A stretch of DNA of 64,000 nucleotides from Iphione sp. A-MEVVRFRX5 (GCA_976226885.1 OZ320320.1:39866001-39930000); one strand, 5' to 3'; positions 11,626 through 51,551 are shown, numbered from the stretch's first letter. Notes: generated from the letters alone by a model not told the origin. Program-made: numbers and translations.

Positions 11626-12345
11626 AGGTTCCTTATAGGATAATACTGTATCCACACTCCATTCAAGCCAAAATGTTGGAGCAAGCAGGAACAGAATTAA
11701 TCGCGATGTGTCTTTCACAAATTGGTTTGCCCAGAATGCTGATGTTTCTGTCATTGGATGCAAATCATCAAACAGTTTATTAAAAAAGGCTTCATATCTG
11801 TGATTTTTTCCATGATATGCATGGACTGGTGCCTCTACCCATGCAGGGGTGACATCAAGATAAATATTGGTCTTGATAATAAGGTTATTAATTTTTTGTA
11901 TACCCTTGATAAAAGCTTTTTGCACAGGTGGATCTATTGGTATAAAGGCCCCACCCTGTGTAGAAAATGAATTATATTTATTAAAATCGATCGCTGTTAT
12001 TGGGCATCATACAATTGGAGGTAGATGCCTAATGTCACTCATACATGATACATGCATTCTTAGTAACGCTGAGAGATAATCAAAAAGTTCGTTGTCATCG
12101 GTGTACACAGGAACAGACCTCACATCAGTGGAATTGTGTCTGATGAGATCACAGATTCCACCAAAGATATATATCAGGTCATAGGAGAGGGTTTGTCTGT
12201 CATTGTAGATACACTTGGTAATGCGATGTAGATCTCCACCTGGATGAATACAAACCTTGTAAGTATTACAGTGCCTATCAATGTCGTTCAGTAGCCTTTG
12301 TAGCCCTCTGCCTCTCGAGTCAGATAGTATCAATACATTACGGTG
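11488..12345 (-). pseudogene. LINE-A second ORF: SGNH/GDSL esterase
   Basis: ILSDSRGRGL (block I Ser), FGGICDL (block III), FDDLHP (DxxH); the two track ORFs (12007-12333, 11488-11925) are in one frame split by a single TGA. Confidence 0.75.
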
Positions 12346-12421
12346 CTTGTGAAGGTGTTCAAGTGATTCACCCTAGGAAGGATAGAGGCAATAGGGTAGT
12401 TTTAAAAGTTTCATTTAATAT

Positions 12422-13685
12422 CTAAATTTCATTACGAATCTCCATCCAAATTTTCCCTAGAGTGTTTTCACCCTTGCGATTGTTAGATCTTAGATGTTTT
12501 GAGAGGATACCAATCCCAGACCCCATCAACTTATCATGAGTAGAGTGAACTAGGGTTTTTTCTTTCATGTCAATCAAGAGTTTCTTTAGGTCTGGGTTAT
12601 TCTTAAGCTTGATCATTAGAAATTTTTTGAGCTTCTTACCATCCTGAGATCCAGCCTCTTTTGATTGAGGTAGTGTGTTTTTGATATGAAGAACTTGCTC
12701 TATCATATGAGCCTCTGTTACTGATTCAGCTAGATCAGTGCGACCTGCTTGTTTAGCCTGACTATACACCAATGCGTAAGTGACTGTTGGGAGGGTTATG
12801 CAACCGACCTGAATCAGTGTCAAGTGTTCATTGGATGGGGGAGAATGTTTACTTTCAAAATACATGTAGACATGGGAGCCTATAACAATCATTGTGGCTA
12901 CCTGTAGATTCATATTCTTGGGAAAATAGGTTTAGTTGGGTGTGATGATATTTCTTTCCATCAATGATAATAGATAATCTGAAAACAGCAGATTTGTAAC
13001 CCTTGTATTTTGCTAAATTAGCGATAAGCTTGAGGTCTTTCTGAATTTTTGTCATTTCTGCTGGAAGATCCTCAGTTATCCAGACACTAGGATGCTTTTT
13101 ACCTAAGTTAAATCTGTTCTTGAAGATACGGTCTCTGTGCTCAATATGAGTTTATTGAACAAGCACTGCAGAGGGTTTGTGTTTGTTAACAAGATAGGTG
13201 TCTCGAATCTTCGAGTCATTGAGTTTGGGTGAAATATCCTTTAATAGGGTACCAACTTGTTGTTTTACAGAAGAAGTATTGGTGATATTGATACCATGGA
13301 TGATAAGATTAGGCCTCCTGTCTTTTACTTCCCTGTCAAGATATAGATTTTTCAGTTCATCAATCTGTGCCTTGAGCATGAGATTTTCGCATTTGAGTGA
13401 GTTAATTTCTTTTTGCACTGATATGAGATTTTCTCTTAAAGTAGAGGGTGAGTCACCATTAGAGTGTGCAGTAGAGGAGGAGTGACCATTAGTAACCTTT
13501 TTGTTAGTACTTTTGTTATGACTTATCTGTTCCCCTGGTGACAAAGGACACTGGCCAGTAGCGTCAATGTTGGCCAGGGTAGCCTTGGAGGGTGACCCAT
13601 CAGAGTTGTTGCTGTTCGCGCCATCACAAGCACCAGCTGGAGAGGTGGATTCTTTGTTCCTTGTATTCCTCTCTTTCCCTGGCAT
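12422..13685 (-). pseudogene. LINE-A ORF1: basic N-terminus, coiled coil, L1-like RRM/CTD, C-terminal NADAR-like domain
   Basis: MPGKERNTR..., LRENLISVQKEINSLKCENLMLKAQIDELK, RPNLIIHGI, VWITEDLP, IIDGKKY; then YFESKHSPPSN..KNNPDLKKLL..VHSTHDKLMGSG..GENTLGKIWMEIR; one stop, one frameshift. Confidence 0.78.
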
Positions 13686-13785
13686 TTTGTCGCTGATACT
13701 CAGATATTTGATAATATAAACCTTCACTGATGTTGAGAAATCTTAAATGTACAGACTCTGTAGTGTAACGTTTGGATTCAGCGTG

Positions 13786-15895: not shown

Positions 15896-17647
15896 CTAAG
15901 AGGCTAGGACAGCTAGCTCTATCTCGCTGAGCTCACTAGTACTTGGTCTGGCAGTAGTCTGCCGAGTAGTCTTTACTGTAGGTGGTCTCCTCCTGAAAAT
16001 ACACTTCCTCTTCCAAATTATCAAAATTAACACTGCAACAATGACAATTATTACCGCTATTACCATAGGACTGATAGTCTTTAAATGGTGTAGTACCTTG
16101 ACATGTTCGTAACCCTCCTTGATGGCATTCCAGGTCTTAATTTTAATAAGTCGCACTTGTACTCTCTTCTTGAATTTAAGTTCACCAGAAATTTCTGCTT
16201 CTATTTGGTTCGGCCAAGAGAAGTTCATGTTTCGATGGAATTGTACAGTACTTGCTTGTTTGACAACCTTACTTCGACCTTTCTTGGTACCACTGACTCG
16301 CCACTGATCTGTTTCTAATTTGCAATCACCAGGCACTTCTATTTGTGTAAGGCCATAAACATTCTTTACTAGTGCCGGCTTCCCGAGACATCGTAATGTT
16401 ACTGGAACTTGTTCATACGTAGCCACAACAAAATTGCCAATACTTATAGGAAAGACATCAAAGTGTTTGTTATTCCTTTCAGATATTTCAATTACACATA
16501 AATCAAGGGAGTTATTAGTGACTAACCCCCACTCACAGCTAGGTGTTAACAATTCCTTTTGTGGTGAACATACTCGTGGATTTAAACCATAACACTTATC
16601 TGGCCAAAAGATACCACCATTATCAGTATTGACAGTTATTTGATGGCCCTTCACTGTTCTTATGTGCTGTTTACCGGCCTTTACTGGAAAATAATGGAGT
16701 TTGTACTGTAAGTACCGTACTCGGCCTAATGCTGGGATAACAACACGAAACACCAACTTTCTTTCTTCAGTCCATAAAGGCTCAATCCAAACATTTTCAT
16801 AATACCACTCTGGGATAGGGGTCCCATAACCCCACTTCCTAATTTTCAACAAGACATCTTCCAGTTCAGTCACAGCTAGAGTATTCTCTGTCAGCCACCC
16901 TCGCTCTAATTCATGCTTCTGGCTCCAAAAAGCATGAAGCTGTGCAGAAAACTCACGATTCACTAGTTCCAGTTCTCTAATGGTACGGTCAATGGTTCGA
17001 GCAACAATCAGTCCATTAACCCGTTGATCTAGCCCGGATAGATCAGCGCTATACCTATCGAGTCGCTCAACTAACTCTTCTTGATTTCATTGCAGTTCCT
17101 ATAGATCAAAGCGATTTTCTTGCACATATCGCCTTGTTTGATTCACTATTGTCATCATGTCATCATACATGTGTGTAATAACATCTTCGTTAGCCACAGT
17201 TCTGTCGATGATGGAGCTCAGCTCTTCCACTTCTTTCACCATTGCTGTACCAAATAGAGTCCTACTAATGTCACCAACAACATCTAGCAGCCCTCTTTTT
17301 ACCCTTCGTACTCGTCGTCGTGAAGACCTGGACTGCCGGCTTAGCTGGTGCTCCGGTCCTGCGGGCCCTTGCAGTTCCAAAGCAGCCAAGCGAGCCTCCC
17401 AGATACGCTGGTCCTCTGAGGCCACTCGAGAACCGGCTGACTGGATACCCTCTTTCACACACCCTACCCATGCCCGCATGGGTATTGCTGGGGGAGGGTT
17501 GATCACCACCAATGCAGTCCAGATAGCCTCAATTGTACGGGTCGATCCTTCTTCTTCTATCAGCACGCCATCATCATGGAAGAGGTTAGCTGTCATCACA
17601 CAAGTTATGCCACTTAGGCACAAAGCAATGACACCAAGGCAATGCAT
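15896..17647 (-). pseudogene. env: Gypsy-1 envelope, baculovirus-F/errantivirus-type class I fusogen
   Basis: Signal peptide MHCLGVIALCLSGITC, furin site RVRRVKR|GLLDVVGDISRTLFGTA, heptad region, Cys-rich domain, TM VIAVIIVIVAVLILIIW; interrupted by stops near 17099-17085. Confidence 0.88.
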
Positions 17648-20600
17648 TGTCGTTTTGCCTCACTATCGTCTACTGCAGACCCACAACGTTTACCTTTTAA
17701 TGTGGGTCCTAGGAGTCGGCTGGCTCTAGGAGATGGTGCATCAGGATGTTCGTCTTGGCTACGTCTCCCGCACAGACTAGGACCAAGGCGTCGCTGTGCC
17801 TGTGCCGCTGGCCCCTCGTCGACAGCGGTCGATGGTCGTTTACTTGGTAGGGGAGGCTCCAGTTGCTGTGCTGTTGTCCCTGGAGTGGATATTAGGCGCT
17901 GAGCCAACCGGGCACTGTGTCTAAGTGATGGAGTTGAAGCTTGGGTCTCATCACCACCAGCTTCAAGTTGCTGCTCCCAGTCTGGTTCCCGTTCTTCATT
18001 CACTGGGGAAGTTGTCTCACTAGCTCATTGCTGTGTGGTGGTTGGCACATTTATAGGCAGTCTCCTGGCTGCACGTGTGATCCATGGTCTGACATCATCC
18101 CAGACCGAGTCCGGGTTCACCAGCCTCAGTTTGTCACGATTGACCACTCTTCTCTTCCCGGTACGCTGGTTTACGATGGTGATGACTGGTCCTTGCACTT
18201 GGGTCACCAAGTACTCATGGTCCCACCTGGAGTCCAATGGTGTACGTTCTTGGGCAACCATGATAACTTGATCACCTGGCTGGAGTTGTCCAGCCCTGGC
18301 TCTCTTCTGCAGATGTTCACGGTTGTAGTACCGGCTCTCTTCTGTAGCCCTAGCTGCATCTTTGAAGGCCTGGGTCAGCAAGTCGATTTTTTCCCCTATG
18401 GCTCTGGGGTCAGAGCCCTCTGTACGATTGAGCATCTTCGTGAGTGGGGCTTACGGCTTCCTTCCATACTGCAAGAAGAAGGGGGTGTAGCCTGTCACAG
18501 TAGACGTGGAAATGCGATGTGCCCATAAAGCCTGACCCAGCTTGTCCTCCCAGTCTGATGTTCGGTTGTCAACCAGCTTGCGAATCATGTTCTTCAGGGT
18601 ACGATGGAACCGCTCTATTTTCCCATTCGTTTCTGGGTGGTAGGGTGTTGTACTTTGATATTCTATCCGCACTGACTCCATATACTGTTTCACCAGTGTT
18701 GCTTGGAACTCTAGTCCTCGGTCAGTGATAATCACTTCTGGTGCACCATATCGCGGTAGATATTCTTGTTCCAGGTATCTCAGAACCCATTGCGATTCCT
18801 TACTTGGTATTGGTTTTACCTCTACCCAGCCACTGCAGTGGTCAATGATCGTCAGCATGTATTTGTTCCCATACTTTGTCAAGGGAAGGGGCCCACATAG
18901 GTTCATCCCGATAATCTGTCCTGGATATGCTGCTACTGGCATCTCTGTTGGTGGTGGGAACTCTCTTCGTTCTTGATTAATGGCACAGCGTTCACACTTA
19001 GCCAACACTGCTGTCACATCTTGTCTCTGTCTTGGCCACTTGTAAGCCTCTTGTATCCTGTCTAAGGTTTTCCGTACAGCCTGATGTCCAACTTCTGTAT
19101 GTGCCCTTCGAATTACCCTGTAGCGAGCACTAGGTGGTAACACCAGCCTTGGATAGGGGAGTTTTCCTTCAGGTGGGACTATGGTGTACAGTAGTCCCTT
19201 CATAAGTTCATATCCTGAGTCTTCTTCCTGTGCCATCTCGTACTCTGGCATCTTCTTCTGTTCATCGATGATTTCTTGCTTCTCTAACTGATCGAACTCC
19301 CATGGGATCTGGTTAGGATGTTCTCCCATGATGTCGTCTGCAGCAATCCAGTCTGTTGTTGTCTCAACAGCTCCGATGTTTCTTGTTTTGATCCGTGATA
19401 GCATGTCAGCTCTGATGTTGTTTGTCCCCTTTCGGTACTCAATAGGAGCTCCGTACTCCGCGATGAGTACTGCCCACCGTTGGATCTTCGTGTTCTTCAC
19501 TTCTGACAGGAACAGGGATTTCAATGGCTTGTGATCAGTGTATATGGTGAATTCTGCCCCATGAAGATATGGTCTCAACTTTGTTAGGGCATATACCACC
19601 GCGTAGGCCTCCTTCTCTATGGTAGCCCACTTGAGTTGGTTGCCTGCGAGTTGTTTGGAGACATATTGGTTAGGCTTCTCCACTCCATTTTCTTCCTAGA
19701 CAAGAATCGCACCAACCGCATAATCACAGGCATCCGTGTATACCTTATAAGGTTTTGACATATCCGGATGCGCCATCACTTCACTTGAGATCAGTTTCTG
19801 CTTCAACATCTCAAATGCATCTTGTTCTTCTATCCCCCATTCAAACCTTGCATGTTTCCTTGTCAGTTTGACTAATGGTGTTGCGATCGTTGCATAGTTG
19901 GGGACACATTGTCTATAATACCCAGCCATGCCAAGAAATGATCTCACCTCGGTGACGTCTTTGGGAGGTCCTAGTTCTGCAATGGCTCTTGTCTTTTCGG
20001 GATCACACACAATTCCGTCTGCACTGACGATGTAGCCTAGCAGGTGCACTGAAGGGACATCTATGTGGCATTTGCTTGGCTTAAGCTTCAGGCCATAATG
20101 CTCAAGAGCATCAAAGACTTGGCCCAAATGTTGTTGGTGTTCCTCATTGTCTTTGGAATATACCACAATATCATCAATGTATACCATGGCAAAATCCCCC
20201 AGCATGTCTCCTAGTACCTGTTGCATAGTGCATTGGAAAATAGCAGGTGCGTTGGCCAATCCAAATGGCATTCTTAAGAACTCGTACAGGCCTCGGTGAC
20301 ATACAAAGGCAGTCTTCTCCATATCATATTCGTGTACAGGTACCTACCAATAACCTGACTTCAGGTCTAAAGTGCTGAAAACTTTAGCTCCTGCTAGACT
20401 GTCAAAGATATCTTGAATTATTGGCAGTGGGTGAGCATCCTTTTTGGTGATCGCGTTCAGCTTCCGGTAGTCGACACAAAACCTGGTAGTTCTGTCCTTC
20501 TTTGGTACCAGTGTGATCAGAGAAGCCCATGGTGAGTGGCTGGGTCAGATTACGCCATCTTGTATCATCTTATCGATCTCTTTCTCTACTTCTTTTCATT

Positions 20601-36640: not shown

Positions 36641-37899
36641 GTTAAGTCATCATAAAATGATCATGCCCGAGTCACAGACAATACCAACATGCCATTTTTC
36701 ATGTCTTCATCCCAACCACTCACTCGAGCCCATTCCTCAAATTGTGAATGCCAACCTTCTCAATCTGTCTTTCCATTGAATCATTCCGATTTGTTCAGGC
36801 TGAAATGAGAAGGTGGTTTTGGTTCTTCCTTTGGCAGTTACCTTGGTGACATGGAATGACTCTCCCATTCTGATTGATTGATTGATTTGCTTTATTGGCC
36901 TTCTCGATACACAGACAAAGTTTTTGTTAGACAATAGCAATGAACAAGAGCAACATATATACACAAGACATATAAACAGACAGTAGGATGATAACAGATA
37001 GAGGAATGGCACACAGGCTAGTGTTCCAACAAAGCAAAAAAGACACACATCATATTGACTCTGCTGTTATAACATGCTACATAGTTAGTGACTCGCCAAT
37101 AGTCAAAATGCATGCGACTCGGGTGCTGCCTATCAACAGAAAGAAATGACAACTAGATACAGGCGACGCACCCTTGGCCTTTGGATTTCTAACCACTCGC
37201 AACCCACACTATAAACATACTGCATCAACCACTAAAAGCTCACCTTAGCCTGCCAAAAGTGATGCTACACTGCTTATTGGCTGGCCGCCGACCTCAGCCC
37301 TACTGACCCTCCTTCCCAGTGCCCTAGTGAGAACTCTTATCGCCACTGTGGAGACTAAGTTTAGCCCCCTGACAGAACATATAGGACGTACCACAGCTTA
37401 CAACTCACCTTCATTCCCCATTTTTACTAGTGTGGTGAACACAATAATCACCAATGTCCCAGTAATTGTCCACTGATGTTCAGAATGTACAATCGATACC
37501 TCCAAATGTCCCGAATACTCTATAATGCTAAGAAACAACTGATAACATAACCATAGCACAATGACCCCTCATGTCTGGTGTTACACATTGCAGCCCTCAT
37601 CCATGAGGCAAAAACTCTAGCCTCTAAGACTGTGATGGATTTAATTGTTCACCATGCAGCTAGACCCATTGCCTAAAATTCGGCTTCAGATGAAGCTTCA
37701 TGGTCGTTGTGCATGGCCTGAGGTACAGTGTGGCCCCACTGTACCTCAGGCCATGCACAAAAGAACCACCTCTGGGTCGCTCAACCTTTATTTTTGCAGT
37801 GCTTCCCCTATGGGTGATCGTATTCTTTGCCTTAGGCAGAATATCCAGTACCATCAGGTGACGAAATACAGCGAGTGCCCGATGAAGTACCAGGTGTTG

Positions 37900-38140
37900 C
37901 ATCCTCTCAATGTTGAATTTGGCACAAATCATTTTGGCCAGACAGGTTCTGTTGTCTTGTAGACGAATTTGGACGCAACCAGGAATAGCAATCTCTCCAT
38001 TTGTGTGGCTACAATTGATCCACGATTCTATAACAAGGCAGACATCCACTAGAACCTCCAGTAGATGTCTCCCCAGATCATCAGTTTTCCTTACCAGACT
38101 TTGAATGTTATAAGCCACTATTGTACCAGACATTTCACAC
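37900..38140 (-). pseudogene. LINE-E APE fragment (LINE-B family)
   Basis: IVAYNIQSLVRKT..DVCLVIESWINCSHTNGEIAIPG matches LINE-B IVGYNIRSLVKKT..DVACITETWLGQGHSNREIYMPG. Confidence 0.8.
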
Positions 38141-39630
38141 TGCTGTGTCTGGCTATCAAACTTGCCTGTTCCTGTTGGTGCCGCATGTACTCGCCAAATT
38201 CCAGTATCATCTCGTCCCAATCGGAACTTGGTTCTTTCTTAACATCCAATTATGGCATTTACCAATGGGGTTGTTGAACCTGAATGGGCAGGGTCAGAGG
38301 CATGCGGGGATTGATGGGTAAGGTACAATGTACTTTGCTCATGGGGCAAAACACACTTCCCCCCACTCCCATTGGAGTCCTTCCAGGTAGAAACATCACA
38401 CCAGGGTCTGGTTTCAGCAGAATGGGACTGGGTGTGATTGGCCACAGAGGAGGCCTTCGAGTATGAATCTGCACGGGTCCTGGCGAAGAAGGCTCACTCG
38501 GTGGAAGCTGATTTTCGTCCTGCTCCCCGTCTGCCTGGGCAGGTGCAGGAGCCCTCCAGGCTCTTGTGCAGTACCCAAACCAGTGCCAGGTGCAGGGACA
38601 GGTAGTGTCTCTAGTTCATAGTCCAAACCATTGTTGTTTACACCAACCTCATATGATAATCATTCCCGTTCTCTCCCAATTCCTCCTTCCCTGACTTTTT
38701 TCCTTCATTCTCTGATCCACCTTCCTCTACTTTGTGACCAATGTCAGCCTCCTTGCCCAGGAAGGTGTCCAGAACCAAACTCTCCACTGATTCACTCTCA
38801 TCTCAAAATACTGTCGCCATCACTCATCAGAGGTGTAAGGTCCATTCTTCATGTGAGAATTCCCTTTCCTTCTGGAATAAGAGAATCCTAAGGCTGCCAC
38901 CAAAATGTAATGTGTCTCTTAGGCTCAGATGAATGATGGTTCATGAAATAAAGAATGTCCCTATGAGATCAGAGTTCAGCATGTTCTGTCTTAAGTGCAG
39001 TGACGGACTAACTCTTTATTCAGGAAGTGAGTCTAATAAATATACACAGTCTGGCCCTAAGGGTGGCCATGTGACATGACCGGTCAACCAAATTTAGCAA
39101 TAATTAACACCTTTCAATTGCCAATTTATGGTTCAAATCAGAATTCTTCCAGTTCAAGTAGGAATATCTGCAGATTGCCAGGAACCCTGCTTTTTTGTGT
39201 CTTGAGTCAGAATAATTCCGACTCGAGACCCAAGGTTTCAGTTAAACATCTTAACCTAGCCATGTACAATTCTTAAGTATTGAAACCCCAATAATCTGGG
39301 TTGAGACCAAATCACTACACTTTGTTTTAATATGTGCATATAAGGCAAGAAAAATTAGGCATGTTCACGCAGCACAAGGCTAGTAACTTGAAATGACTTA
39401 TAAATATGCAAGCCATTTGGCAAACTTGTTCTTCCTGTCAATATATTTCTCACATAATATGCTTATGAGAGAGTTCGACTATCTCCCTTGTCAGGACAGA
39501 GCAAGTGACACAGTGGTGCTAGGGGCACAATATACGACATCATTTACCTTATCTAGGCAACAGGTGTAGTGTTGTGACCAGGGAGTTTAATTGTTGCCAC
39601 ACTACAAGACATTCTACTACCAGGATCCCT

Positions 39631-40250: not shown

Positions 40251-41040
40251 CAGCCACTGAGCTTCGCCAGAGGTACCATCAAAGTGACGCTGAAGCACCC
40301 ATGTGGGCATCTTCGCCGCTGAGACAAACATTCATCAGTGAGGTAGCGGAAGCGGCTAACTGACACGTGGTGTACTCATCGTACTTTGTCCAAGGACGAA
40401 GCCCGCTGTTCTCACGTTTCCGAGGACGACAGAATCGACCGAGGTACATCACCAGAGTGTTGGGACACCCCGCGTACTCGCTAACAGTACGCCGGGAACA
40501 TCAACTACCACGACAGGTCACCGAACGCGAACTTCCGAGAGGCGTGCGACTCACGGTAGGAGAATAGCCCTTGAACCTGTCGCTGACAGAACCAGTGAAG
40601 CCTGGAAGGCGGACGCTGTCACAGACGAAACCAGTTGTAGAGGGCATTCGGCGAGTGTCCCCCGACCCTCAGTGGGGCCGGTTAGAGGCGCCGGTCGAGG
40701 AAGTGGACTGCAATCAGTTACCCCCTGCCCAACCGGGTAGGACGACGAGTCCACTGAACTAGCTAAGTCCCGAGGACCTACGGCACACCATCGTGAGACG
40801 TCGCGAGGCAAGAGGGGCAGCAGACAACGATGAGCAGATGCAGCAGCTCCTACAAGCGGTCCAGAGGGGAGCATCACCCGTCGCGAGGTGTACCTGGTGT
40901 CGTGCGTTGGAGTCGGGAGAGGGAGGAGCCAGTCGTCGCCGCCGCGAGCACTGTTGCCGCTTGAGTTCACGATTGAAATGGCGCGAAACGAGTAGACGTA
41001 CTGTACGAGTGGTCCTCTGGAAATATATGATTCAGACAAA

Positions 41041-42492
41041 ATGCCCAGACAACCGAGAGCTGAAAACAAGGGAAAAGACACCCCCAACAGACCTGGACTC
41101 CGACCGCGCTCCAGATCGCTAAAAGATGAAACCACAACAGAAGGAATTGATCAGTAAAAATCCGATCAAGACATGGAGGGCGATAATGGAGGAAGCGTCG
41201 GCGGCGGTGACAAGGGCAACGAGGAACCGAGGAATGTAAACAAAGGGACTCAGGTCAGTGACAGTGTCAATGCCAGTGACAACAACGGTGTGACTCTGAC
41301 ATCTGAATCAGTGAGCCGCCTACAACAAGAAGTGGAGACACTACGAGCTGAGATCACCCGGCTAAAGGCCCATCTAACGGTGGACCTAGGAGCACTGAAG
41401 AACGAGATAGAGACATTGAGGCAGGAAAACAGAGACCTCAAGGAGAGCTGACTGAGAGACCGGAGCGACAGGGAGAAAGCCCTGGCATCGGAGGTGGGTG
41501 GCCTGACAGCGAGCATAGCTGTGGTATCTAAAAAAGTAACCAAACTAGACGATGATATCTCAAGGATCGAACTGCGCCATAGATCGAAGCGGCTGGTAGT
41601 GGAAGGGATACCGAAGGATGAAGAAGATCGACTGACGAAGTACATTGAGTCGTTAATGCACTACGTTGCTGGTGTCAACAAGCGTAAAATACGGGACGTA
41701 CTTATATTGAACAAAGAGGGGAAGAAGCTGAAAGCGTGCGTCTGGCTTGATGAGATCGAAACAAGGAGGCAAATCCTAAAGAACAGAGCGGTTCTAGTGA
41801 AGTCACGGCTGTACTCGACAGTATACATCTCGGAAGACATTCCACCACGAGCACAGGATGTCCATCGCAGACAATCGCGCCTGGCGTCGGCTGCTAGGAG
41901 TGGAGGAAGACGCACGACTGTGAGAGGGACGGACCTGCTTCTAGATGGGGAAAAATACACCCTGCTGGATACGGAAGAGTTACCACACGATATACTGGAT
42001 GAGCTTCGATCGCCAATAGAAGACGGGGATGAGGTGAGCTTCAATAATGAGGTCCCAGGCCTATCCCCAATGGAATATTCACCGATGGAGCTAGACGGCA
42101 CATACTTCGACTGCCTTGAGACTGCGTACCAAACATGCAAGTCGTGCATCTGCAAAGACTCTCGTGCAGCACGAGATCTAAACAACTGCGCGTCGGGCTA
42201 TGAGGCGAGGAGGATTGGAGCAAAAATTGAAGAAACAGACCAATGGACCGATGCAATAGAAATCACATTAGATACACTGGTGGGTCGAAAGTATGAAAAT
42301 AACAAATGCCTAAGGGATCAGTTGTTGTCCTACGATGTAAACTCTTTGATGTATCTTGATTACAATCGCACGCTCGGCTCTGGTACGAAGGGAGCGGGGG
42401 TTAACGAAGACGCGGGAATGAGAGTAGGGAAAAACCTGCTAGGGCAAGCGTTGAGCAGGTACATAGGCAAAATTAAGAATGGAACGGAGTAA
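41041..42492 (+). CDS. LINE-B ORF1: coiled coil + L1-like RRM/CTD + NADAR-like domain (two in-frame stops, no frameshift)
   Basis: MPRQPRAENK..., LQQEVETLRAEITRLKAHL, RSKRLVVEGIP, VYISEDIP, LLDGEKY; NADAR motifs 42031-42465 ending GKNLLGQAL; stops at 41155 and 41449. Confidence 0.82.
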
Positions 42493-42549
42493 CACATAGC
42501 ACATCGGGACAGTTGTTTTGATGTTTTGATGTATTGATGTTTACGTATC

Positions 42550-43422
42550 ATGTCGCTTACATGTCTCTATGTTATTTTTCTGGAATGGGACGTGCGTCCA
42601 CCTATTACAATAGACTTTTTGTGTAAACAAGGTAAAATGAGGTCATGTGCGTTATCCAATTGTACTTGTGTTGGTTACTCAGTTGTATTACCAGTAAGTA
42701 TTGTGTGTTCTTCGCAATCCTCAGAGTTTTGGATCCGCAACCATCCGCGGGTGCCTGATTCACTACGTACGAGGGTCGTGACCATCTGCGACTCAAGAAC
42801 ATTTAGGACTGTTATGCGACTCCGATGTCGACAAATGCCACCGGTGGAGATAAGAGTATGGAGATTCAGATGCATCGCATACTCAACCCTACTGCGATTT
42901 CTGGGAGGCCACGACCTGTCAGACTACAGGGTAGTGGTGGTAATGACGGGTACCTACGATCTGTTGCGACGGGAGTGCTGTCAATGGACTCTGAGGTGCC
43001 AAGACGTCAGACGGTACAGCACGAGGCTGAGAGGGACGATCGCCCGTTTAACCCAAATGCTCAGGGGAGTAGATGAGGGAGGCCCAAGATTAATCTGTGT
43101 GCCGATGCCGGGAATACTGCTGAGGCGTTGCGAGCCAGATTTATTCCTGGAATATCCGCTACAACAGATACTCCTCAATGATACCACATTTGAACACAAC
43201 TCGGTCTGCATGCGGACTGCACGGCGATATGGCCTACAAGCACCTGGCATTGACAGTGTGATCAACGGTGTGGTAGGTGGAATATTCCATTTAGATGGTG
43301 AACATCTAACAATAGATGGCATTGGTCTTGAGCTCCATGTACATTCGGAGTGGGCCACAGAGCTGTCTGTTCTTATTACAAACTTTATTTATCGTTTTGG
43401 TTTACCTGCAATCCTAATTTGA
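42550..43422 (+). CDS. LINE-B ORF: SGNH/GDSL esterase, open frame of 290 codons
   Basis: VVTICDSR (Ser), MTGTYDL (block III), LDGEHL (DxxH); homologous to the LINE-A esterase; true start uncertain. Confidence 0.72.
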   Translation: MSLTCLYVIFLEWDVRPPITIDFLCKQGKMRSCALSNCTCVGYSVVLPVSIVCSSQSSEFWIRNHPRVPDSLRTRVVTICDSRTFRTVMRLRCRQMPPVEIRVWRFRCIAYSTLLRFLGGHDLSDYRVVVVMTGTYDLLRRECCQWTLRCQDVRRYSTRLRGTIARLTQMLRGVDEGGPRLICVPMPGILLRRCEPDLFLEYPLQQILLNDTTFEHNSVCMRTARRYGLQAPGIDSVINGVVGGIFHLDGEHLTIDGIGLELHVHSEWATELSVLITNFIYRFGLPAILI

Positions 43423-44252: not shown

Positions 44253-47033
44253 TTGACTATGGGGATTCCAATAGTTGGATACAACATACGAAGCTTAGTT
44301 AAAAAGACGTGGCAATTAGTTGACCACCTAAGAGGTTGTAATACAGATGTGGCCTGTATTACAGAAACTTGGTTGGGGCAGGGACATAGCAATCGTGAAA
44401 TTTATATGCCAGGTTATTCAGTGGAACGGAGGGACCGGCCTACAAGGGGAGGGGGTGTAGCGATCTACTACAAAGAAGGAATTCGTTTGGAGAAGGTAAT
44501 AGAGCTACCAGATGACTGCTCCGGCTGCGACATGCTAGCGCTTCGACTGAAGGTGGGAAAACAACGACCAGTGGAAGTGCTTGGAGTTTACCGGCCACCT
44601 GGAGTGTCTGTCAAGGACAGTATCAAGGTGATAGAGGGCACAGCACGGTGTCTAGGTAAATCGGGACGATGCGATAGGGTTATTATGGGGGATTTTAATT
44701 ACGATTACATGTCAATAGGGAAAGCTGGAACAGGAATCGCCAAACTGCTATCAGAACTAGGGTACATACAACAAATCGAGGAGGCGACCATGCTTAAGAA
44801 TGACCACTGCCTAGACCATATATGGACCTACTTTAGAGGGAGATGCCAAGGACGGACAAGAGAATGGTTTCTGAGTGACCATCTGGCGACAGAGGTGCTT
44901 CTGAAAAAGGGGAGACCGAAATATGTGGAAGAGACAAAAACTGTTCATGACTGGAGGAATGTGGATATCAGCAATCTGCATACATTCATGAGAGGTGCCC
45001 ACATGAGAATGGACTGTGACCATGAGGACTCATGGGAGAACTTTGAGGACAGTCTAAGAAAAGAACTGGAAACCAGAAGCCCTGCAAAAACAGTGAAAGT
45101 GAAAAAGGATGACAATGGATTCTTACCAAGTGCAGAGGTAAAACAAGTCCTAGAGGAACGAAAATACTTCTATCAGAAATGGAGAAAACACCAAACAGAA
45201 GACAACTACCGAGTATTTAACTTCTGGAACAAGAGGGCACGACAGGCACTAAGGCGGAACCGGCGTGAGCATTGGGAGAGGAAGATAAGGTTGGCCAGTG
45301 GAAACAGCAAGCAGACCTGGGATTGTCTAAATGAAGCCCTACACAGGAATGTGAAACAGGAAAAGATGCCTGATGGAGAGAGCTGGAAGCGGAATCATGG
45401 GATGAGCTTCGCTACATCGCTGAATAACTTCTATGTGCATGAAGTTGAGGCCATCTCAGGAATCACTAAGGATGACATAAGGAGGGACAACAGCAGGAAG
45501 AGAGAACTTATTCATGGACAGGGATTCTAGCTAACGCCACCATCACCAACTGAGGTGATGGCCTTGGTTAGTAAGATAAGGGTCCGAAAATCGTCAGGCA
45601 TAGAGGGAGTGCCAACAAGGATCATAAAACCCCTGTTTGAACTATGCCCGGACTACCTAAGCTGGCTATTTAGTGAGATCTTCAGAACTGGAATGTACCC
45701 GAAACGGTGGAAGGTTGCAAGAATTACACCGGTACATAAACGGGGGTCCGTGGAGGAAGTGGGAAACTTCCGGCCGGTGTCAATCCTACCGGTGCAAGGT
45801 AAACTGTGCGAGAGATGGTTCGTGAAGGAACTCAGCAGGAAACTGGAAGCATTGGGAAAACTAACAACCGCTCAGCATGGTTTTCGTGAACAGCGTGGGA
45901 CAGAAACAGCAGTAGTTAACATTGTCAACACGGCCATGGAATTGATGAACGAGGGCAAGTATTGTTGTTTAATAACATTCGATCTAAAGAAGGCCTTCGA
46001 CATTGTGCCCCACGTCACGATCCTGGAGAGGCTGTCTGCTATGGGTGCAGGAGCGAAAACGAAGAGAATGATCGACTCGTATCTAACAGATAGAAAACAG
46101 TATGTCAGGTGCCTAGGGGAAAAATCAGCCGAATTGCCGCTGAAACAAGGAGTGCCACAGGGATCCATATTTGGCCCTGTGGCTTTCATCCTAGCCGCCA
46201 ACACGGTGGAGGCACATCTTCCGAATCACTGCCATGCAGTGTTGTATGCTGACGACCTGTCGTTGTTAGTATATGCAAATGATCTACTGAGACTACGTAC
46301 AACTGCTGCACGAGCTGTGGAGGGGGTTCACTCCTGGTGTGCCAAAGAGAGACTGGTAGTCAGTATCGACAAATGTGCCTACTCCCCCCTTGGAAAAGCC
46401 ACAGGCATACCCCTGGACCTGTCCCTACTAGGAGAGCCGCTAAAGATGACTCAAAAGACCGAACTACTTGGGTTTGTCTTAGACGGCAAACTTACGATGA
46501 AAGAAGGCATCAAGCAAGTCAAGGCGCGAACATGGAGGACGGCATTGACTATTGGGCGGACAAAAGGATACCTGCCTATAGGGGCAAGGGCCATACTTCT
46601 AAAGAGTCTTATCTTTCCCCACTTTCACTACAATAGTGCCATCTGGTATGGGATAACGGCATCAGACAAGATCAATCTGCAGATACATCTAAACCGATGT
46701 ATTAGGGTGTGTCTGCAGAAAAACTCCTTCCTGTCAGCAACCGTAATGTGCACGAGGTTTGGTATCCCCAAGGTGGAGGAGATGATCAAGACCAGAGGCC
46801 TAATCGCCATACACAATCAAGTGAAATTGGGTCTGCTGGAACAAGGGAAAGTGTCTCGGACAAGACGGGGACGTGAAGTGCGAGGTATGCTTCCAAGGCC
46901 CAAAGACACTCGGTTCACCTCAAGTTTGAGGTATGATGGAACAAGGAAGTGGAATGAACTACGACAAGAACTAAAGGACATGCCCAAACTAACAAGGAGG
47001 GTGTTGCAGAGGGAAGATCGTGGGCTGGTGTGA
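44253..47033 (+). CDS. LINE-B ORF2: APE-RT, single in-frame TAG at 45528-45530
   Basis: YNIRSL, ITETW, RRDR..GGGVAIY, YRPP, GDFN, CLDHIW, SDH; FRPVSIL, FDLKKAFD, GVPQGS, YADD. Confidence 0.96.
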
Positions 47034-47867
47034 TCTACATGCATGGACGCAAACTGGCTTGTCCAGTGAGGCGAGGATCACTGTGGGAGGGAAAGGGACG
47101 AGCGGACCAACGCAATCGACTAACACAGAGCAACAGGGTACACCAACACTGAAAACGAGACTACATATCTGGACGAATGTCGAGACAGGGGAGGGGACGG
47201 GAAACACGGGGAGAGGGAGCAGACTGGAATGAAAAATGGAAAGTATGAGGCACACTGGGGATGAAAGGGTGGATGAGAATGGATGATGCATGGAATTGAA
47301 TGGATTAGATGCCTCATAGTGGAGATGAAAGGAAGGAAAGACGGATATGATGGGGGTTTGCCACTTGACTGAGGAGTGAGAGATAGAATGCATATCAAAA
47401 TTCTATGAAGGATATGGGAGAGTATATAAGGATTTAATGATCAAAAGGTATGGTGTAAAGAGATGATAACCCAGACTGTCTGTTGTGGAAGGAGTGTGTA
47501 AGGCTGATATTAATACAGCGTGAGGAGAGAAGGAGTGTGGATATGGGGCGTGGATGTTAAACACATGAGAATTGTAATTAGTAGGGACGCAGAACAGAGC
47601 GTGGTACGATGGATAAGCATTTTGTGTTGGGAATGTTATGCATAAAACTTATTGAGGTCTTGTTATGTTATAACAGATATCGCATGATTTACAAAACACT
47701 ATGGTCTAACAAGAAGTTTTGTTCAGGGAATATTTAGGTGAGAACTGAGGACTTGTATATGGCAATCATCTATTTCTATGCTTGGAATGTAACAAACGTG
47801 TAACCTTGTGAAAACCATCTTCAGTGAGGGATTTATGTAGAAGAAATGAGAACTACACTGTATTGAT

Positions 47868-47932
47868 ATAACACAATTGTTTATTGCAAACACAATCCTC
47901 TGTTGTAAACACAATCCTTTGTTGTAAACACC
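47868..47932. repeat. ~22-bp tandem repeat x3 in the LINE-B 3' UTR
   Basis: AAACACAATCCTYTGTTGT units. Confidence 0.75.
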
Positions 47933-47961
47933 GACTTTTCTCAGCACATTCACATGGAAAA

Positions 47962-48013
47962 CTCTGTAATCGCCTATGGAGATTTTGAATAAAACAATTG
48001 AAATTGAAATTGA
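47962..48013 (+). terminator. LINE-B 3' end: stem-loop, AATAAA, (ATTGAA)n
   Basis: CTCTGTA-ATCGCC-TATGGAG hairpin, AATAAA at 47988. Confidence 0.8.
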
Positions 48014-48168
48014 AGTTACCCATAACCGGTTAAGAGACAGGACTGACAACAGAGAACCCAGAATAATGAACTGTGCAGCCATGAAGCTGAAAGGTGAGCG
48101 AGAGTTTCTGGGGATGTTCTGCCAAGACACATGAACCTAGTGGGTAGGGTTTAAGGGTCCAAATTGTG

Positions 48169-48365: not shown

Positions 48366-49293
48366 ATGGAGGTGCCCGAGGCGCCCCAGGGAGTGGAGGG
48401 AGGAGGTCCGAATCTCCAGCGATGCTTTCAAGGAATAGATCAGCACTTAGCTAAGGTGACAGAAAATTTGAGTAAACAGGGAGCTAAACAATCAGTTCCT
48501 AGTTTTGATGGAAAGCCAAAGGGATTCAAGCCATGGATGAAAGCAATTGAACACGCTACCATTGGATACGTGGTGCGGCCTGAGGCAGCCATGTGATTTA
48601 AGCAACGGCTAGCCCAGCTAACAGCAGAAGGGCCGGTAGCTGATTATATCATACGTTATGTGGAAGAACAAGACAATAGACTTCAAGGAGGTGATCCTCA
48701 AGTGCTTGAACCGGTTTTGACCCAGGTTGAGTGGGGCAGGTTTAAGGAGCAACTATCCTGCAGATTTGGGGAGGTTATTGCGGAAATGTAAGCCAAAATC
48801 CGATGAGACCATATATGTATACTCTGAGAGGTTACTCGATCTAGCCCGAGACGCCTTTTCGGATGAAGAAATGCACCAAGCAGCGGTGCAACAACAGCTA
48901 GTCGAATTCTTCACAGACGGGGTGAAGAACCCCAAGGTGGCTAGGAAAATAATACGAGAAGGACATGAAGATTTTGTGGCCACTGTCACCTGTGCAGGAG
49001 GTGAGACGGAAGTCCTCCGCCATATATCATTGAGAGGGAGAGATGAACATACCCCCATGGAAGTAGATGCCATTGACACCAGGAAAAAACGGTTTCAGGG
49101 CAATTGTCACTGCTGTGGCAAGCAGGGTCACGTGGCGAAGAATTGTTACGCCGCGAAGGCCAAGTTAAGGGGACAGAAGGAGGGTGTTCCCCAGCAACCG
49201 TTATCAAAGGTGGTTAAGAAGGTCCAATGTTATGGATGCAAAAAGTTCGGACACTACCGGTCCCAGTGCCCGAATAAAAATTCAACGAATTAG
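48366..49293 (+). pseudogene. gag: Gypsy-2 gag with two CCHC knuckles
   Basis: VPSFDGKPKGFKPWM, TPMEVD, CHCCGKQGHVAKNC, CYGCKKFGHYRSQC; stop and frameshift near 48596-48727. Confidence 0.92.
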
Positions 49294-51551
49294 GAAGACC
49301 GACGCCTGATACAAGATGACTGATAGGCTGACTATTAAAATTAAGGTAGGCCCGTATGGCTTCCGCGCTCTGCTAGATACTGGGGCAGACGTGTCTGTTG
49401 TGAGGGAGGATACCTACAAGAGTCTGGAGAAGCGAAGGCTGGCTACGATGGTGGATACACCACCCATCACTATACGAGGAGTGGATGGTGGAGAATTACA
49501 GCAATAGGGTGTGACTAATATCGAATTCTCAGTCCAGGGAATTAGTTTCTCTGCGGAGTTCCAAGTCATGAGTCGCCCTCGACACACGTTTATCCTAGGT
49601 TGGGACTGGTTAAGCCAGCACCCAATGCAGTTGTTGCCGGAGGAGGGGATGGTACGTTGTGGATCCTTGTTGATCCCCATGATTGCCGAACAACAGGTTG
49701 AGGCAATCGTGCGGGTGGAATCCGATACCATCCTGCCCCCGAATACGGCAGTTATAGCATGTGGTAAACGGAGACGGAAGGATACTCCGGTAGGGGATAC
49801 CCAGGCTATGATAGTGAAGGGTTCCAAGCAGAGTTACCTAATTGAGGAACCTGGAGTCATAGTCGCCAACTCTCTTACGACTGTGCGATCCGACAAAATT
49901 CCAGTATTAATTGTAAACACCACTACGCGCACCCTAATGCTGAAAGCAGGGAACGTGATCGCAGAGGTCGAGCCTGTCCGAGACGAAACTTGCCACGAGT
50001 TGGGACTGATCGGTACGAACTCAGCGCCAACCCCTCGCCAATTAAATGTAGCAGTCTCCACTTTAGGGGAGCTGCTGGCGAATAACGAGGATTTATTTGC
50101 AGCCTCGGATATGGAGTTGGGTTGCACCCATCTCGTTACCATGGAGATCAACACGGGAGATCACGAACCCATTGCTTAGAAGCCCTATCATGCACCACTG
50201 TCCCGACAAACTGTGGTAGAGGAGAAAATACAGGGTATGATGGACGCTGGCATTATCCGCACTAGTCGCAGTCCGTGGGCTTAACCGATTGTGCTGGTGG
50301 AGAAGAAAGATGGCACGATGCGATTTTGTGTCGATTATCACCGCGTCAATGATGTTACTGTCAAATTCAATTGGCCATTGCCTCGAATCGATAATATCTT
50401 GGCTAAGCTGGGAGGCAGTACCTGTTTTTCTACCTTAGATCTTCGTAGCGGTTATCATCAAGTCCCTATGGATGAAGCCTCCAGACCCAAGACCGCATTT
50501 GCTTGTCACGCAGGGTTATTTGAATTTAATGTCATGCCATTTGGGTTGTGCAATGCACCTAGTGTTTTTTGCGAGCTTATGGCCAAGGTTCTGGATGGAA
50601 TTAACGGCACGTTCACCACAGCTTATATCGACGATATCTTAGTATGGTCGCCTGACCATGCTACTCACCTTTGCCATCTGCAAATGGTGTTTGATCGATT
50701 AAGAAGTGCAGGGCTGAAGTTGAAGCAAAGCAAGTGCAACTTCTTTTGTCCTCGCTTGCAATATCTAGGGCATATCATCACGCCTGATGGAGTACAGCCT
50801 GATGATGGAAAAGTAGCTAGCATCTCCGACCTGGAACCTCCAGTCGACGTAAAGGGTGTCCGATCCTTTATAGGGATGGCTAGTTTCTACAGAAGATATG
50901 TGCCAGCATTCACCCAGATTGCCGAACCATTGATTGCCATGACCCGAAAGCGTGCGGAGTTTAAGTGGACTCCTGAGTGTCAGATCGCCTTTGACACGTT
51001 GAAGGAGAAGCTTATCAATCCTCCACTTTTGGCCTTTCCAGTGTTTGACCGGGAGTTCATCTTGTATACCGATGCGAGTGACGCATGCATCGGAGCTGTG
51101 CTCATTCAGGAGTTTGACGACGGAGAAAGACTGATCCAGTATATGTCGCACCACCTGAGTGAAACTCAGCAGAGGTGGCCCGTTATTGAAAAGGAAGGGT
51201 TTGCCATTGTCTCTGCAATCCGGAAGTTCCGCGCTTTTCTGTACGGACATAAATTCATTGTCCGTACGGACCACAAACCCTTGAAATTCTTTTTTAAAGT
51301 CAGAACAGAAAAACGCTAAGGTCCAGCATTGGGCCATGCAGCTTTCTGAGTATGACTGTGAAATTCAATACATCCCTGGTAGGGATAATATTCCCACCGA
51401 TGCTTTAAGTTGGCTTTGGTCAGGTCGAGAGGATCTGCAGGTAGGACACTCCAATTCTGGAGAAGAACTGGCTCCGCTCGACCAGACCGATTCGGATGTG
51501 GGATCAGGGGCCCCTTGAGGATTCCGCGCCTGAACCGTATGTACAGAGTAC

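What the first reader, a model, noticed from the sequence alone, without database searches (positions are those of the whole stretch)
41041..42492. LINE ORF1 fused to a NADAR (YbiA-like) ADP-ribose-related domain
Seen: after the coiled coil and L1-like RRM/CTD, ORF1 continues for ~145 aa. The motifs match the NADAR pattern in order: F.....S....P..LDG..F...E..YQ..K, (S)GYEARRIG, W, KYENN..LR..LL, GSG, GKNLLGQAL. Established: NADAR proteins (E. coli YbiA, DarT1-associated antitoxins) act on ADP-ribosylated guanine or related metabolites. Macro domains are known as rare LINE ORF1 cargo, but I do not know of a described NADAR-ORF1 LINE family. Inference: the RNP carries a module that removes or shields ADP-ribosylation (PARP activity at TPRT intermediates, or guanine ADP-ribosylating enzymes), i.e. 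a retroelement counter-defence.
Basis: partly seen in the sequence, partly recalled or inferred. Interest (0 to 1): 0.92.

Follow-up and report, generated by a model that had tools for sequence, protein, structure and literature searches.

The report
LINE ORF1 protein carrying NADAR domain
A broken copy of a jumping gene (a LINE retrotransposon) encodes an L1-type RNA-packaging protein that ends in a genuine NADAR-fold domain; the fusion is old, selected and widespread but was already noted in a 2025 paper, and this family has swapped a key catalytic residue, so what it does is still open.

Summary
Window 41041-42492 (+) is a LINE ORF1 with a basic N-terminus, coiled coil, RRM, CTD and a C-terminal NADAR domain. 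The evidence is Pfam PF08719 above its gathering score and an AlphaFold model matching Phytophthora NADAR (Z 19), E. coli YbiA (Z 15) and human L1 ORF1p (Z 12).

This copy is dead: it has two in-frame stops in ORF1 and one in ORF2. Relatives in the same genome keep open ORF1 frames of about 450-600 aa and the same three-ORF layout (ORF1-NADAR, a small SGNH-like ORF, APE-RT).

The NADAR part evolves under purifying selection as strong as on the RRM and CTD (dN/dS about 0.06-0.25). Public assemblies hold ORF1-NADAR genes followed by APE-RT.

- **Novelty.** The architecture is not undescribed. A 2025 Genome Biology paper notes YbiA-type NADAR domains in ORF1 of oyster LINEs in Repbase. This scan has also reported it repeatedly on other DNA of this genome.
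- **Function.** In this family the catalytic Glu (Glu125 of the Phytophthora enzyme) is an invariant Tyr and Trp133 is Leu, while the Glu43 and Lys50 equivalents are kept. Hydrolysis of ADP-ribosylated bases is therefore doubtful here. A binding or altered-chemistry role is at least as likely. No function has been tested.

The parts
41041..41304 (+). ORF1 start (ATG 41041) and basic, low-complexity N-terminal region; broken by an in-frame TAA at 41155-41157
   Evidence: Translation. The same N-terminus, with the conserved TP..LR.R motif, is open in intact relatives.
41305..41583 (+). Coiled-coil region of ORF1; broken by an in-frame TGA at 41449-41451
   Evidence: Heptad-like sequence. Weak Pfam coiled-coil and leucine-zipper hits. 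Profile hits to coiled-coil PDB chains. Model helices 2-14 and 19-30.
41590..41835 (+). RRM domain of ORF1p
   Evidence: Model strands and helices 33-114. Many RRM structures match at Z 8-9, and L1 ORF1p matches at Z 12.1.
41845..41997 (+). CTD of L1-type ORF1p plus linker
   Evidence: Model residues 1-188 align to human L1 ORF1p residues 125-323. The conserved EDIPPRA...ATVRG block is present.
41998..42486 (+). NADAR (YbiA-like) domain. Equivalents of Glu43 and Lys50 of 8bau are present. Tyr stands at Glu125, Asn at Asp130 in this copy only, and Leu at Trp133.
   Evidence: Pfam PF08719. Z 19.0 to 8bau and 15.0 to 2b3w. Residue mapping.
42490..42492 (+). ORF1 stop codon (TAA)
42550..43422 (+). 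Middle ORF, SGNH/GDSL-like fold. The conserved part begins near 42784.
   Evidence: It is conserved in position and sequence in 5 divergent copies. The AF2 model (pLDDT 65) best matches GDSL esterases at E about 6e-4, TMt about 0.5. It has no Pfam hit.
44253..47033 (+). ORF2: apurinic-type endonuclease plus reverse transcriptase; one in-frame stop at 45528-45530 in this copy
   Evidence: Pfam Exo_endo_phos 6.3e-12 and RVT_1 4.8e-31. The relative L051 has one open 924-aa frame.
47034..48024 (+). 3' UTR with AATAAA at 47988-47993 and an (ATTGAA)3 tail at 47997-48014. Homology to the sister copy ends at about 48024.

Best explanation
This is a decayed copy of a three-ORF non-LTR retrotransposon (LINE). 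Its first protein is an L1-type RNA-packaging protein (coiled coil, RRM, CTD) extended by a NADAR-fold domain. That much is shown. The domain belongs to the element: it sits in one frame with ORF1 in many diverged, still-open relatives and has been kept by purifying selection. It is therefore inferred to ride on the LINE ribonucleoprotein next to the element's RNA and nascent cDNA. Related ORF1-NADAR LINEs mostly keep the full NADAR active site (Glu, Lys, Glu). The inferred ancestral job is to deal with ADP-ribose-type N-glycosides on nucleobases of the element's own nucleic acids. In the family of this window the third catalytic residue is an invariant Tyr and a pyrophosphate-contacting Trp is Leu, while the ribose-contacting Glu and the essential Lys are kept. 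My most likely reading (inferred, untested) is that this family's domain still binds a ribosyl or ADP-ribosyl ligand but does not carry out efficient canonical hydrolysis. It would then act as a reader or shield, or have attenuated or altered chemistry. The window copy itself is non-functional.
For: Identity of the domain: Pfam NADAR above the gathering score. Family profile against PDB gives YbiA 6e-6 and 8bau 1e-4. Foldseek 2.3e-6 and VIA Z 19.0 to 8bau; L1 ORF1p Z 12.1. Part of the element: a search of the genome gave 3836 first-look candidates, and all 121 scored were significant, at 100-33% identity. Most span the NADAR part, and most lie in open frames of about 450-630 aa. Five diverged copies share ORF1-NADAR, a middle ORF and APE-RT. 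Selection: NADAR dN/dS is 0.06-0.25 in unsaturated pairs, the same range as RRM and CTD. Spread: many of the best hits of the NADAR profile among 1.84 billion proteins are 400-600 aa with a C-terminal NADAR. hhalign of the family against P0008 gives 99.8% probability, collinear over RRM, CTD and NADAR. P0021 and P0020 are each followed by APE-RT on their contigs. Active site: 24 of 30 family members read E-K-Y-D-D-L at the positions of Glu43, Lys50, Glu125, +2, Asp130 and Trp133. Tyr is invariant in all 30. By contrast, 50 of 59 public ORF1-like proteins keep Glu125. The roles of these residues are described in PMC11543638.
Against: No biochemical or expression data exist. No sequencing run was listed. 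The Asp two residues after the Tyr is nearly invariant. In DarT1-linked NADARs the working acid sits two residues away from the canonical Glu position, and phage NADARs use His there. A displaced catalytic acid could therefore keep this family active. The residue mapping rests on profile alignments with a one-residue indel between the Tyr and Asp130. I could not inspect the model's coordinates. No ADP-ribosyltransferase that would create a substrate was identified: PF01375 found nothing, but its control search was silent too.
Confidence: 0.45

Rival explanations
1. The domain is an active hydrolase in this family too. It would strip ADP-ribose from guanine-N2 or cytosine (or a related N-glycoside) on the LINE RNA, cDNA or target DNA, using the nearly invariant Asp two residues after the Tyr (or the Tyr itself) in place of the canonical Glu. 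This is a retroelement counter-measure.
For: Equivalents of Glu43, Lys50, Trp89 and Asp130 are conserved. Purifying selection is strong. Active NADARs already use Glu, Asp (displaced by two residues) or His at this site. An animal (sponge) NADAR is active on G- and C-ADP-ribose in DNA and RNA. Phages use orphan NADARs against DarT1 (PMC11825919, abstract).
Against: Tyr replaces the residue whose equivalent is essential in E. coli C7 NADAR. Trp133 is Leu, and the positions of Arg79 and Arg93 are not conserved, so pyrophosphate contacts are reduced. No cognate transferase was found (inconclusive).
Confidence: 0.3
2. The NADAR fold has been re-used for something unrelated to ADP-ribose. Examples are a small-molecule N-glycosidase (YbiA-like, acting on ribosylamino-pyrimidine metabolites) or a purely structural, oligomerisation or nucleic-acid-binding extension of ORF1p.
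For: E. coli YbiA is reported to cleave riboflavin-pathway N-glycosides, and TIGR02464 gives a weak match. Several pyrophosphate contacts are lost. LINE ORF1 proteins are modular and carry other accessory folds such as esterases (PMC3905857 and PMC4120745, listed).
Against: The ribose- and phosphate-contacting Glu and Lys stay almost invariant across copies only 34% identical. Most related LINEs keep the complete ADP-ribose-hydrolase site.
Confidence: 0.15
3. The fusion is an artefact of this locus: a host NADAR exon captured once, or a chance read-through.
For: Only that this copy is broken by stop codons.
Against: The same in-frame architecture occurs in all 121 scored matches across 14 contigs of the genome and in unrelated public assemblies, under purifying selection.
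Confidence: 0.01

Closest known systems
Repbase 'Tx1' LINE families of Crassostrea gigas with NADAR in ORF1, noted in PMC12477816 (Genome Biol 2025)
   Same: A YbiA-family NADAR domain inside the ORF1 protein of a LINE. Its role is stated there as unclear, possibly processing of the RNA intermediate.
   Different: Different genome. Here there is a three-ORF layout with a separate SGNH-like ORF, a 924-aa ORF2 and an (ATTGAA)n tail. By my recollection of these clades, those features look more CR1/L2-like than Tx1-like. Tyr replaces the catalytic Glu.
Stand-alone NADAR enzymes: P. nicotianae NADAR (8bau) and E. coli YbiA (2b3w)
   Same: Same fold (Z 19.0 and 15.0). The Glu43 and Lys50 equivalents, Trp89 and Asp130 are kept.
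   Different: 17-20% identity. Here the domain is the C-terminal module of an RNA-binding protein. Glu125 is Tyr, Trp133 is Leu, and Arg79/Arg93 are not conserved.
Human LINE-1 ORF1p (2yko/2ykp)
   Same: Coiled coil, RRM and CTD in the same order; Z 12.1 over model residues 1-188.
   Different: 8-13% identity, and L1 ORF1p ends after the CTD with no enzyme-fold extension.
Esterase-bearing ORF1 proteins of CR1/L2-type LINEs (ZfL2-1 esterase, PMC3905857; Jockey-superfamily ORF1 modules, PMC4120745)
   Same: A LINE carrying an accessory SGNH-type hydrolase fold. ORF1 is modular.
   Different: In those elements the esterase is part of ORF1p. Here it is a separate small ORF between ORF1-NADAR and ORF2. 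I only saw these two papers' titles and abstracts, so I did not check whether they mention NADAR.
NADAR domains in other RNA-replicating parasites: Ectocarpus Gypsy Pol (PMC12477816) and invertebrate nidovirus polyproteins (PMC11848433)
   Same: [quoted passage not shown]
   Different: Different element classes and a different position of the domain. No function has been shown there either.
DarT1-NADAR toxin-antitoxin pairs and phage orphan NADARs (PMC11543638, PMC11825919)
   Same: A NADAR used by a mobile element to undo guanine ADP-ribosylation. This is the model for a counter-defence reading.
   Different: There the cognate transferase is known and the catalytic acid is present. Here no transferase is adjacent or identified, and the acid position holds Tyr.

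Membership tests
NADAR superfamily (Pfam PF08719 / DUF1768) | Sequence match to the family profile above the curated threshold | tested here: met
   41.2 bits against gathering 35.1, E 2.6e-10. Family profile against YbiA 6.2e-6.
NADAR superfamily | YbiA-like fold (helical core flanked by two small sheets) | tested here: met
   AF2 model against 8bau: Z 19.0, rmsd 2.9 A, 162 of 189 residues. Against 2b3w: Z 15.0. Foldseek E 2.3e-6.
NADAR superfamily | Conserved Glu and Lys seven residues apart (Glu43/Lys50 of 8bau; E88/K95 of E. coli C7) | tested here: met
   E209 and K216 of the 332-aa piece. K is invariant and E is at 90% or more in 30 family members.
NADAR superfamily (YbiA, BC4488 or phage subfamilies) | Charged catalytic residue in the last strand (Glu, Asp or His) | tested here: not met
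   An invariant Tyr aligns with Glu125 of 8bau, and 30 of 30 family members have Tyr. An Asp follows two residues later, so a displaced acid cannot be excluded.
NADAR superfamily | Hydrolysis of guanine-N2 or cytidine ADP-ribose, or of riboflavin-pathway N-glycosides | not testable with these tools
   Needs purified protein and modified oligonucleotides.
L1-type (coiled coil-RRM-CTD) ORF1p | RRM followed by CTD with the L1 ORF1p fold, preceded by a coiled coil | tested here: met
   Model residues 1-188 align to 2yko residues 125-323 at Z 12.1. Coiled-coil profile hits.
L1-type ORF1p | Trimerisation and RNA binding or chaperone activity | not tested
   No complex prediction or experiment was run.
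Autonomous non-LTR retrotransposon (LINE) | APE endonuclease plus reverse transcriptase ORF downstream on the same strand, in many dispersed copies | tested here: met
Autonomous non-LTR retrotransposon (LINE) | Defined 3' tail and target-site duplications | tested here: inconclusive
   An (ATTGAA)3 tail follows AATAAA, shared with the sister copy. The 5' end was not resolved, and TSDs were not sought.
Tx1 clade (the Repbase label of the oyster NADAR LINEs) | RT phylogeny with reference clades | not testable with these tools
   No reference LINE set was at hand. ORF2 matches human L1 ORF2p only weakly (6e-12, RT core only). It has 924 aa, and I saw no C-terminal CCHC in the ORF2 translation.
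DarTG1-type toxin-antitoxin module | NADAR gene next to a DarT1-type ADP-ribosyltransferase gene | tested here: not met
   The neighbours are the SGNH-like ORF and APE-RT.

The most novel reading that the evidence does not exclude
In this LINE family the NADAR domain has become a selected pseudo-enzyme: a reader or shield for ADP-ribosylated (or otherwise ribosylated) nucleic acid carried on the ORF1p particle. More broadly, a sizeable share of the 'animal NADARs' whose physiological role the ADP-ribosylation field calls unclear may be retrotransposon ORF1 proteins rather than host genes.
Probability: 0.3. Interest if true: 0.65.

Novelty: new variant of a known kind. Interest (0 to 1): 0.45.

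Why it matters
LINE ORF1 proteins are usually regarded as RNA chaperones without enzymatic cargo. NADAR enzymes are the only known erasers of guanine-N2 and cytidine ADP-ribosylation, and their role in animals is stated to be unknown (PMC11125620). A large LINE lineage kept under selection with NADAR on its packaging protein implies one of two things. Base ADP-ribosylation, or a related ribosyl mark, of retroelement RNA or cDNA may matter in these animals. Alternatively the fold has been re-used as a reader. The contrast between canonical-Glu relatives and the Tyr-bearing family here offers a natural pair for a simple biochemical test. The value of this particular finding is limited for three reasons. 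The fusion has been noted in print, the scan has reported it many times on this genome, and the window's copy is broken.

Tried and rejected
- **Word-indexed protein searches.** Searches with an intact ORF1 and with the RRM-to-NADAR alignment returned nothing. The exhaustive profile search did find relatives, so the blanks reflect the word index, not absence.
- **Naming the relatives.** Cluster look-ups gave no names for ORF1-like relatives; all come from ENA or Logan assemblies. The only named hit was a multi-NADAR Haliotis rufescens protein.
- **Expression.** The look-up of sequencing runs listed no run, so expression could not be examined and read laying was not used.
- **Candidate transferase.** Enterotoxin_a (PF01375), which I recalled as the model covering pierisin-type guanine ADP-ribosyltransferases, gave no match in the genome. 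The control genomes were silent too, so this says nothing.
- **Other ORF1-NADAR families here.** A second genome search with a canonical-Glu relative (P0008) found further ORF1-NADAR families: 4605 first-look candidates, of which all 96 scored were significant.
- **5' end of the element.** Not resolved. Homology to the sister copy begins only about 65 bases before the ORF1 ATG.
- **Literature.** One search was too broad to be useful. The search for macrodomain + non-LTR + ORF1 found no paper.
- **Rejected readings.** Chance motif match, one-off exon capture, and membership of a DarTG-type operon.

Full report
**What is at the coordinates**

Frame 1 of 41041-42495 (+) translates into an ORF1-like protein.

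The frame is interrupted twice: by TAA at 41155-41157 and by TGA at 41449-41451. Downstream on the same strand lie three further features:
- a 290-aa ORF at 42550-43422;
- an APE plus RT ORF2 at 44253-47033, with one in-frame stop at 45528-45530;
- a 3' UTR ending in AATAAA and (ATTGAA)3 at 47988-48014.

**Is the NADAR call real?**

Yes.
- Pfam PF08719 matches residues 197-322 of the 332-aa piece 41494-42489 at E 2.6e-10, 41.2 bits, above the gathering score of 35.1.
- A profile of 30 family members matches E. coli YbiA (2b3w) at 6.2e-6 and the Phytophthora nicotianae NADAR (8bau) at 1e-4.
- An AlphaFold2 model built on that alignment has mean pLDDT 86.2 and pTM 0.75.
- Foldseek ranks 8bau first (E 2.3e-6, TMt 0.69), then YbiA, then the human LINE-1 ORF1p trimer.
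- VIA-align gives Z 19.0 (rmsd 2.9 A, 162 residues, model 169-331) to 8bau and Z 15.0 to YbiA. It gives Z 12.1 to L1 ORF1p for model residues 1-188 against ORF1p residues 125-323.

The protein is therefore an L1-type ORF1p (coiled coil, RRM, CTD) with a C-terminal NADAR fold.

**Is it part of the element or an accident of this locus?**

It is part of the element. A six-frame search of the window's own genome (1.18 Gb) with the 332-aa piece gave 3836 first-look candidates. All 121 that were scored were significant, at 100% to 33% identity. Most covered the NADAR part, and most lay in open frames of about 450-630 aa.

I extracted 44 ORF1s of more than 440 aa from 50 loci. They share the N-terminal TP..LR.R motif, the coiled coil, RRM, CTD and NADAR in one frame.

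Five copies from diverged subfamilies all show the same three-ORF layout:
- ORF1-NADAR of 478-598 aa;
- a middle ORF of 205-280 aa;
- an APE-RT ORF2 of about 915-940 aa (split into two overlapping ORFs in the fifth copy).

The nearest relative of the window copy (L002/L051, 92% identical in ORF1) has open frames for ORF1 (483 aa) and ORF2 (924 aa). The window copy is therefore a dead member of a family that has open-framed members.

**Selection**

I computed Nei-Gojobori dN/dS between open copies for each segment. In pairs that are not saturated (dS 0.14-0.7) the values are:

| Segment | dN/dS |
|---|---|
| NADAR | 0.06-0.25 |
| RRM | 0.07-0.15 |
| CTD | 0.07-0.22 |

The NADAR domain has thus been as constrained as the RNA-binding core during the family's diversification.

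**Beyond this genome**

An exhaustive profile search with the NADAR part against 1.84 billion representative proteins found 11,855 proteins at E up to 0.001. Many of the best 150 are 400-600 aa with the NADAR at the C-terminus.
- hhalign of the family against one of them (P0008) gives 99.8% probability, collinear over RRM, CTD and NADAR at 24% identity. P0020 behaves likewise.
- On their contigs, P0021 and P0020 are each followed by an APE-RT ORF.
- The ORF2 next to P0020 is collinear with the ORF2 of this family over 847 residues (E 4e-52).

The fusion is therefore old and shared by a broad LINE lineage. Every ORF1-like relative I looked up comes from unnamed ENA or Logan assemblies. The best-scoring named protein is a multi-NADAR protein of the abalone Haliotis rufescens.

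A second search of the genome with P0008 shows further, more distant ORF1-NADAR families. It gave 4605 first-look candidates, and all 96 scored were significant.

**The active site**

For 8bau and E. coli C7 NADAR, PMC11543638 assigns the following roles:
- Glu43 (E88) and Glu125 (structurally D171) flank the distal ribose.
- Lys50 (K95) is essential and contacts phosphate and adenine.
- Lys75, Arg79, Trp89, Arg93, Asp130 and Trp133 contact the pyrophosphate.
- D171A/N, E88Q and K95A abolish activity or toxin rescue.

The last-strand residue is Glu in YbiA-type, Asp in DarT1-linked and His in phage NADARs.

In the family here, the HMMER alignment to 8bau, the family alignment and a column census give this mapping:

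| 8bau residue | This family |
|---|---|
| Glu43 | Glu, at 90% or more |
| Lys50 | Lys, invariant |
| Lys75 | Arg |
| Gly78 | Gly |
| Trp89 | Trp, invariant |
| Asp130 | Asp, nearly invariant (Asn in the window copy) |
| Glu125 | Tyr, invariant in 30 of 30 |
| Trp133 | Leu |
| Arg79, Arg93 | variable |

The signature E-K-Y-D-D-L occurs in 24 of 30 members. By contrast, 50 of 59 public ORF1-like proteins keep Glu125, typically as E-K-E-[T/S]-D-W. In a FastTree of 231 NADAR domains, the 30 members from this genome form one group (one change of label, local support 79). Their nearest neighbour is a Tyr-bearing two-NADAR protein.

The Tyr form therefore looks like a derived, single-origin state that has since been conserved.

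**Reading**

Shown:
- a real NADAR fold on an L1-type ORF1p;
- that it is integral to a large, old, three-ORF LINE lineage;
- purifying selection on it;
- a non-canonical catalytic position in this family;
- a dead copy in the window.

Inferred: the domain travels on the RNP and acts on, or binds, a ribosyl-type modification of the element's RNA or cDNA.

For this family I weigh three options:
- a binding or attenuated (reader or shield) role, about 0.45;
- a still-active hydrolase with a displaced acid, about 0.3. The Asp two residues after the Tyr is nearly invariant, and there is precedent for a two-residue displacement in DarT1-linked NADARs;
- a role unrelated to ADP-ribose, about 0.15.

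NADAR removes guanine-N2 and cytidine ADP-ribose but not PARP15-made guanine-N1 or uracil-N3 marks.

**Prior knowledge**

PMC12477816 (Genome Biol 2025) reports NADAR at the N-terminus of Pol in one Ectocarpus Gypsy lineage. [quoted passage not shown] That is the architecture claimed as undescribed.

Invertebrate nidoviruses also carry NADAR insertions (PMC11848433). Metazoan NADARs are discussed in the ADP-ribosylation literature without mention of transposons in the passages my term searches returned.

Earlier notes of this scan on other DNA of the same genome reached the same picture: real, old, noted in 2025, and with the catalytic residue lost in many copies. I had found the paper and the Tyr substitution before reading those notes.

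**Clade**

I could not run an RT phylogeny. Several features, from my recollection of LINE clades, resemble CR1/L2-type elements more than Tx1:
- the 924-aa ORF2;
- the lack of a C-terminal CCHC, which I did not see in the ORF2 translation;
- the hexamer-repeat tail;
- the SGNH-like ORF.

The match to human L1 ORF2p is weak (6e-12, RT core only).

**Verdict**

The novelty claim is refuted in its general form. What remains new is a well-documented family in another genome, with a three-ORF layout and a conserved Tyr in place of the catalytic Glu.

Noticed in passing
window 42550-43422 (+): A separate small ORF lies between ORF1-NADAR and ORF2. It is conserved in five diverged copies. It carries C-D-S-R-T where SGNH hydrolases have G-D-S, and a D-G-E-H-L motif near the end. 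Its AF2 model (pLDDT 65) best matches GDSL esterases (E about 6e-4). It has no Pfam hit.
   Followed up: partly
window 12007-13727 (-): A second, very divergent and decayed LINE has ORF1 ending in a NADAR-like domain (12422-12913). That domain reads L-V-H-S-T where the canonical motif has Glu, so it has His as phage NADARs do, and Ala at the Glu43 position. It is followed by its own SGNH-like ORF (12007-12333, with D-S-R-G-R-G) and an APE fragment at 10164-10658.
   Followed up: partly
window 48727-50179 (+): Directly after the LINE tail lies an LTR-retroelement-like gag with two CCHC zinc knuckles (48727-49293), followed by an ORF in the position where a protease/pol would lie (not scanned). 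It was only observed, not analysed.
   Followed up: no
window 15896-19683 (-): A retroelement pol fragment whose sequence looks integrase-like by eye (18451-19683, not scanned) lies near two ORFs with hydrophobic, transmembrane-like segments (15896-16963 and 17099-17647). These might be an envelope-like gene. It was only observed.
   Followed up: no
P0001 (XP_048255699.1, Haliotis rufescens): The best hit of the NADAR profile is a 4240-aa 'uncharacterized protein' with seven NADAR domains and no other Pfam domain. Tyr stands at the Glu125 position in 38 of the public NADAR domains aligned, but I did not check this for P0001's own repeats. It could be a host multi-NADAR gene or a gene model built over repeats.
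   Followed up: partly
window 37660-38220 (-): An ORF that by eye resembles an endonuclease (APE) fragment of another LINE lies just upstream of the element. It was not scanned.
   Followed up: no
window 40550-40975 (+): A GC-rich stretch upstream of ORF1 is not shared with the 92%-identical sister copy. Either it is a variable 5' UTR or the sister copy is 5'-truncated. The 5' end of the element is unresolved.
   Followed up: partly
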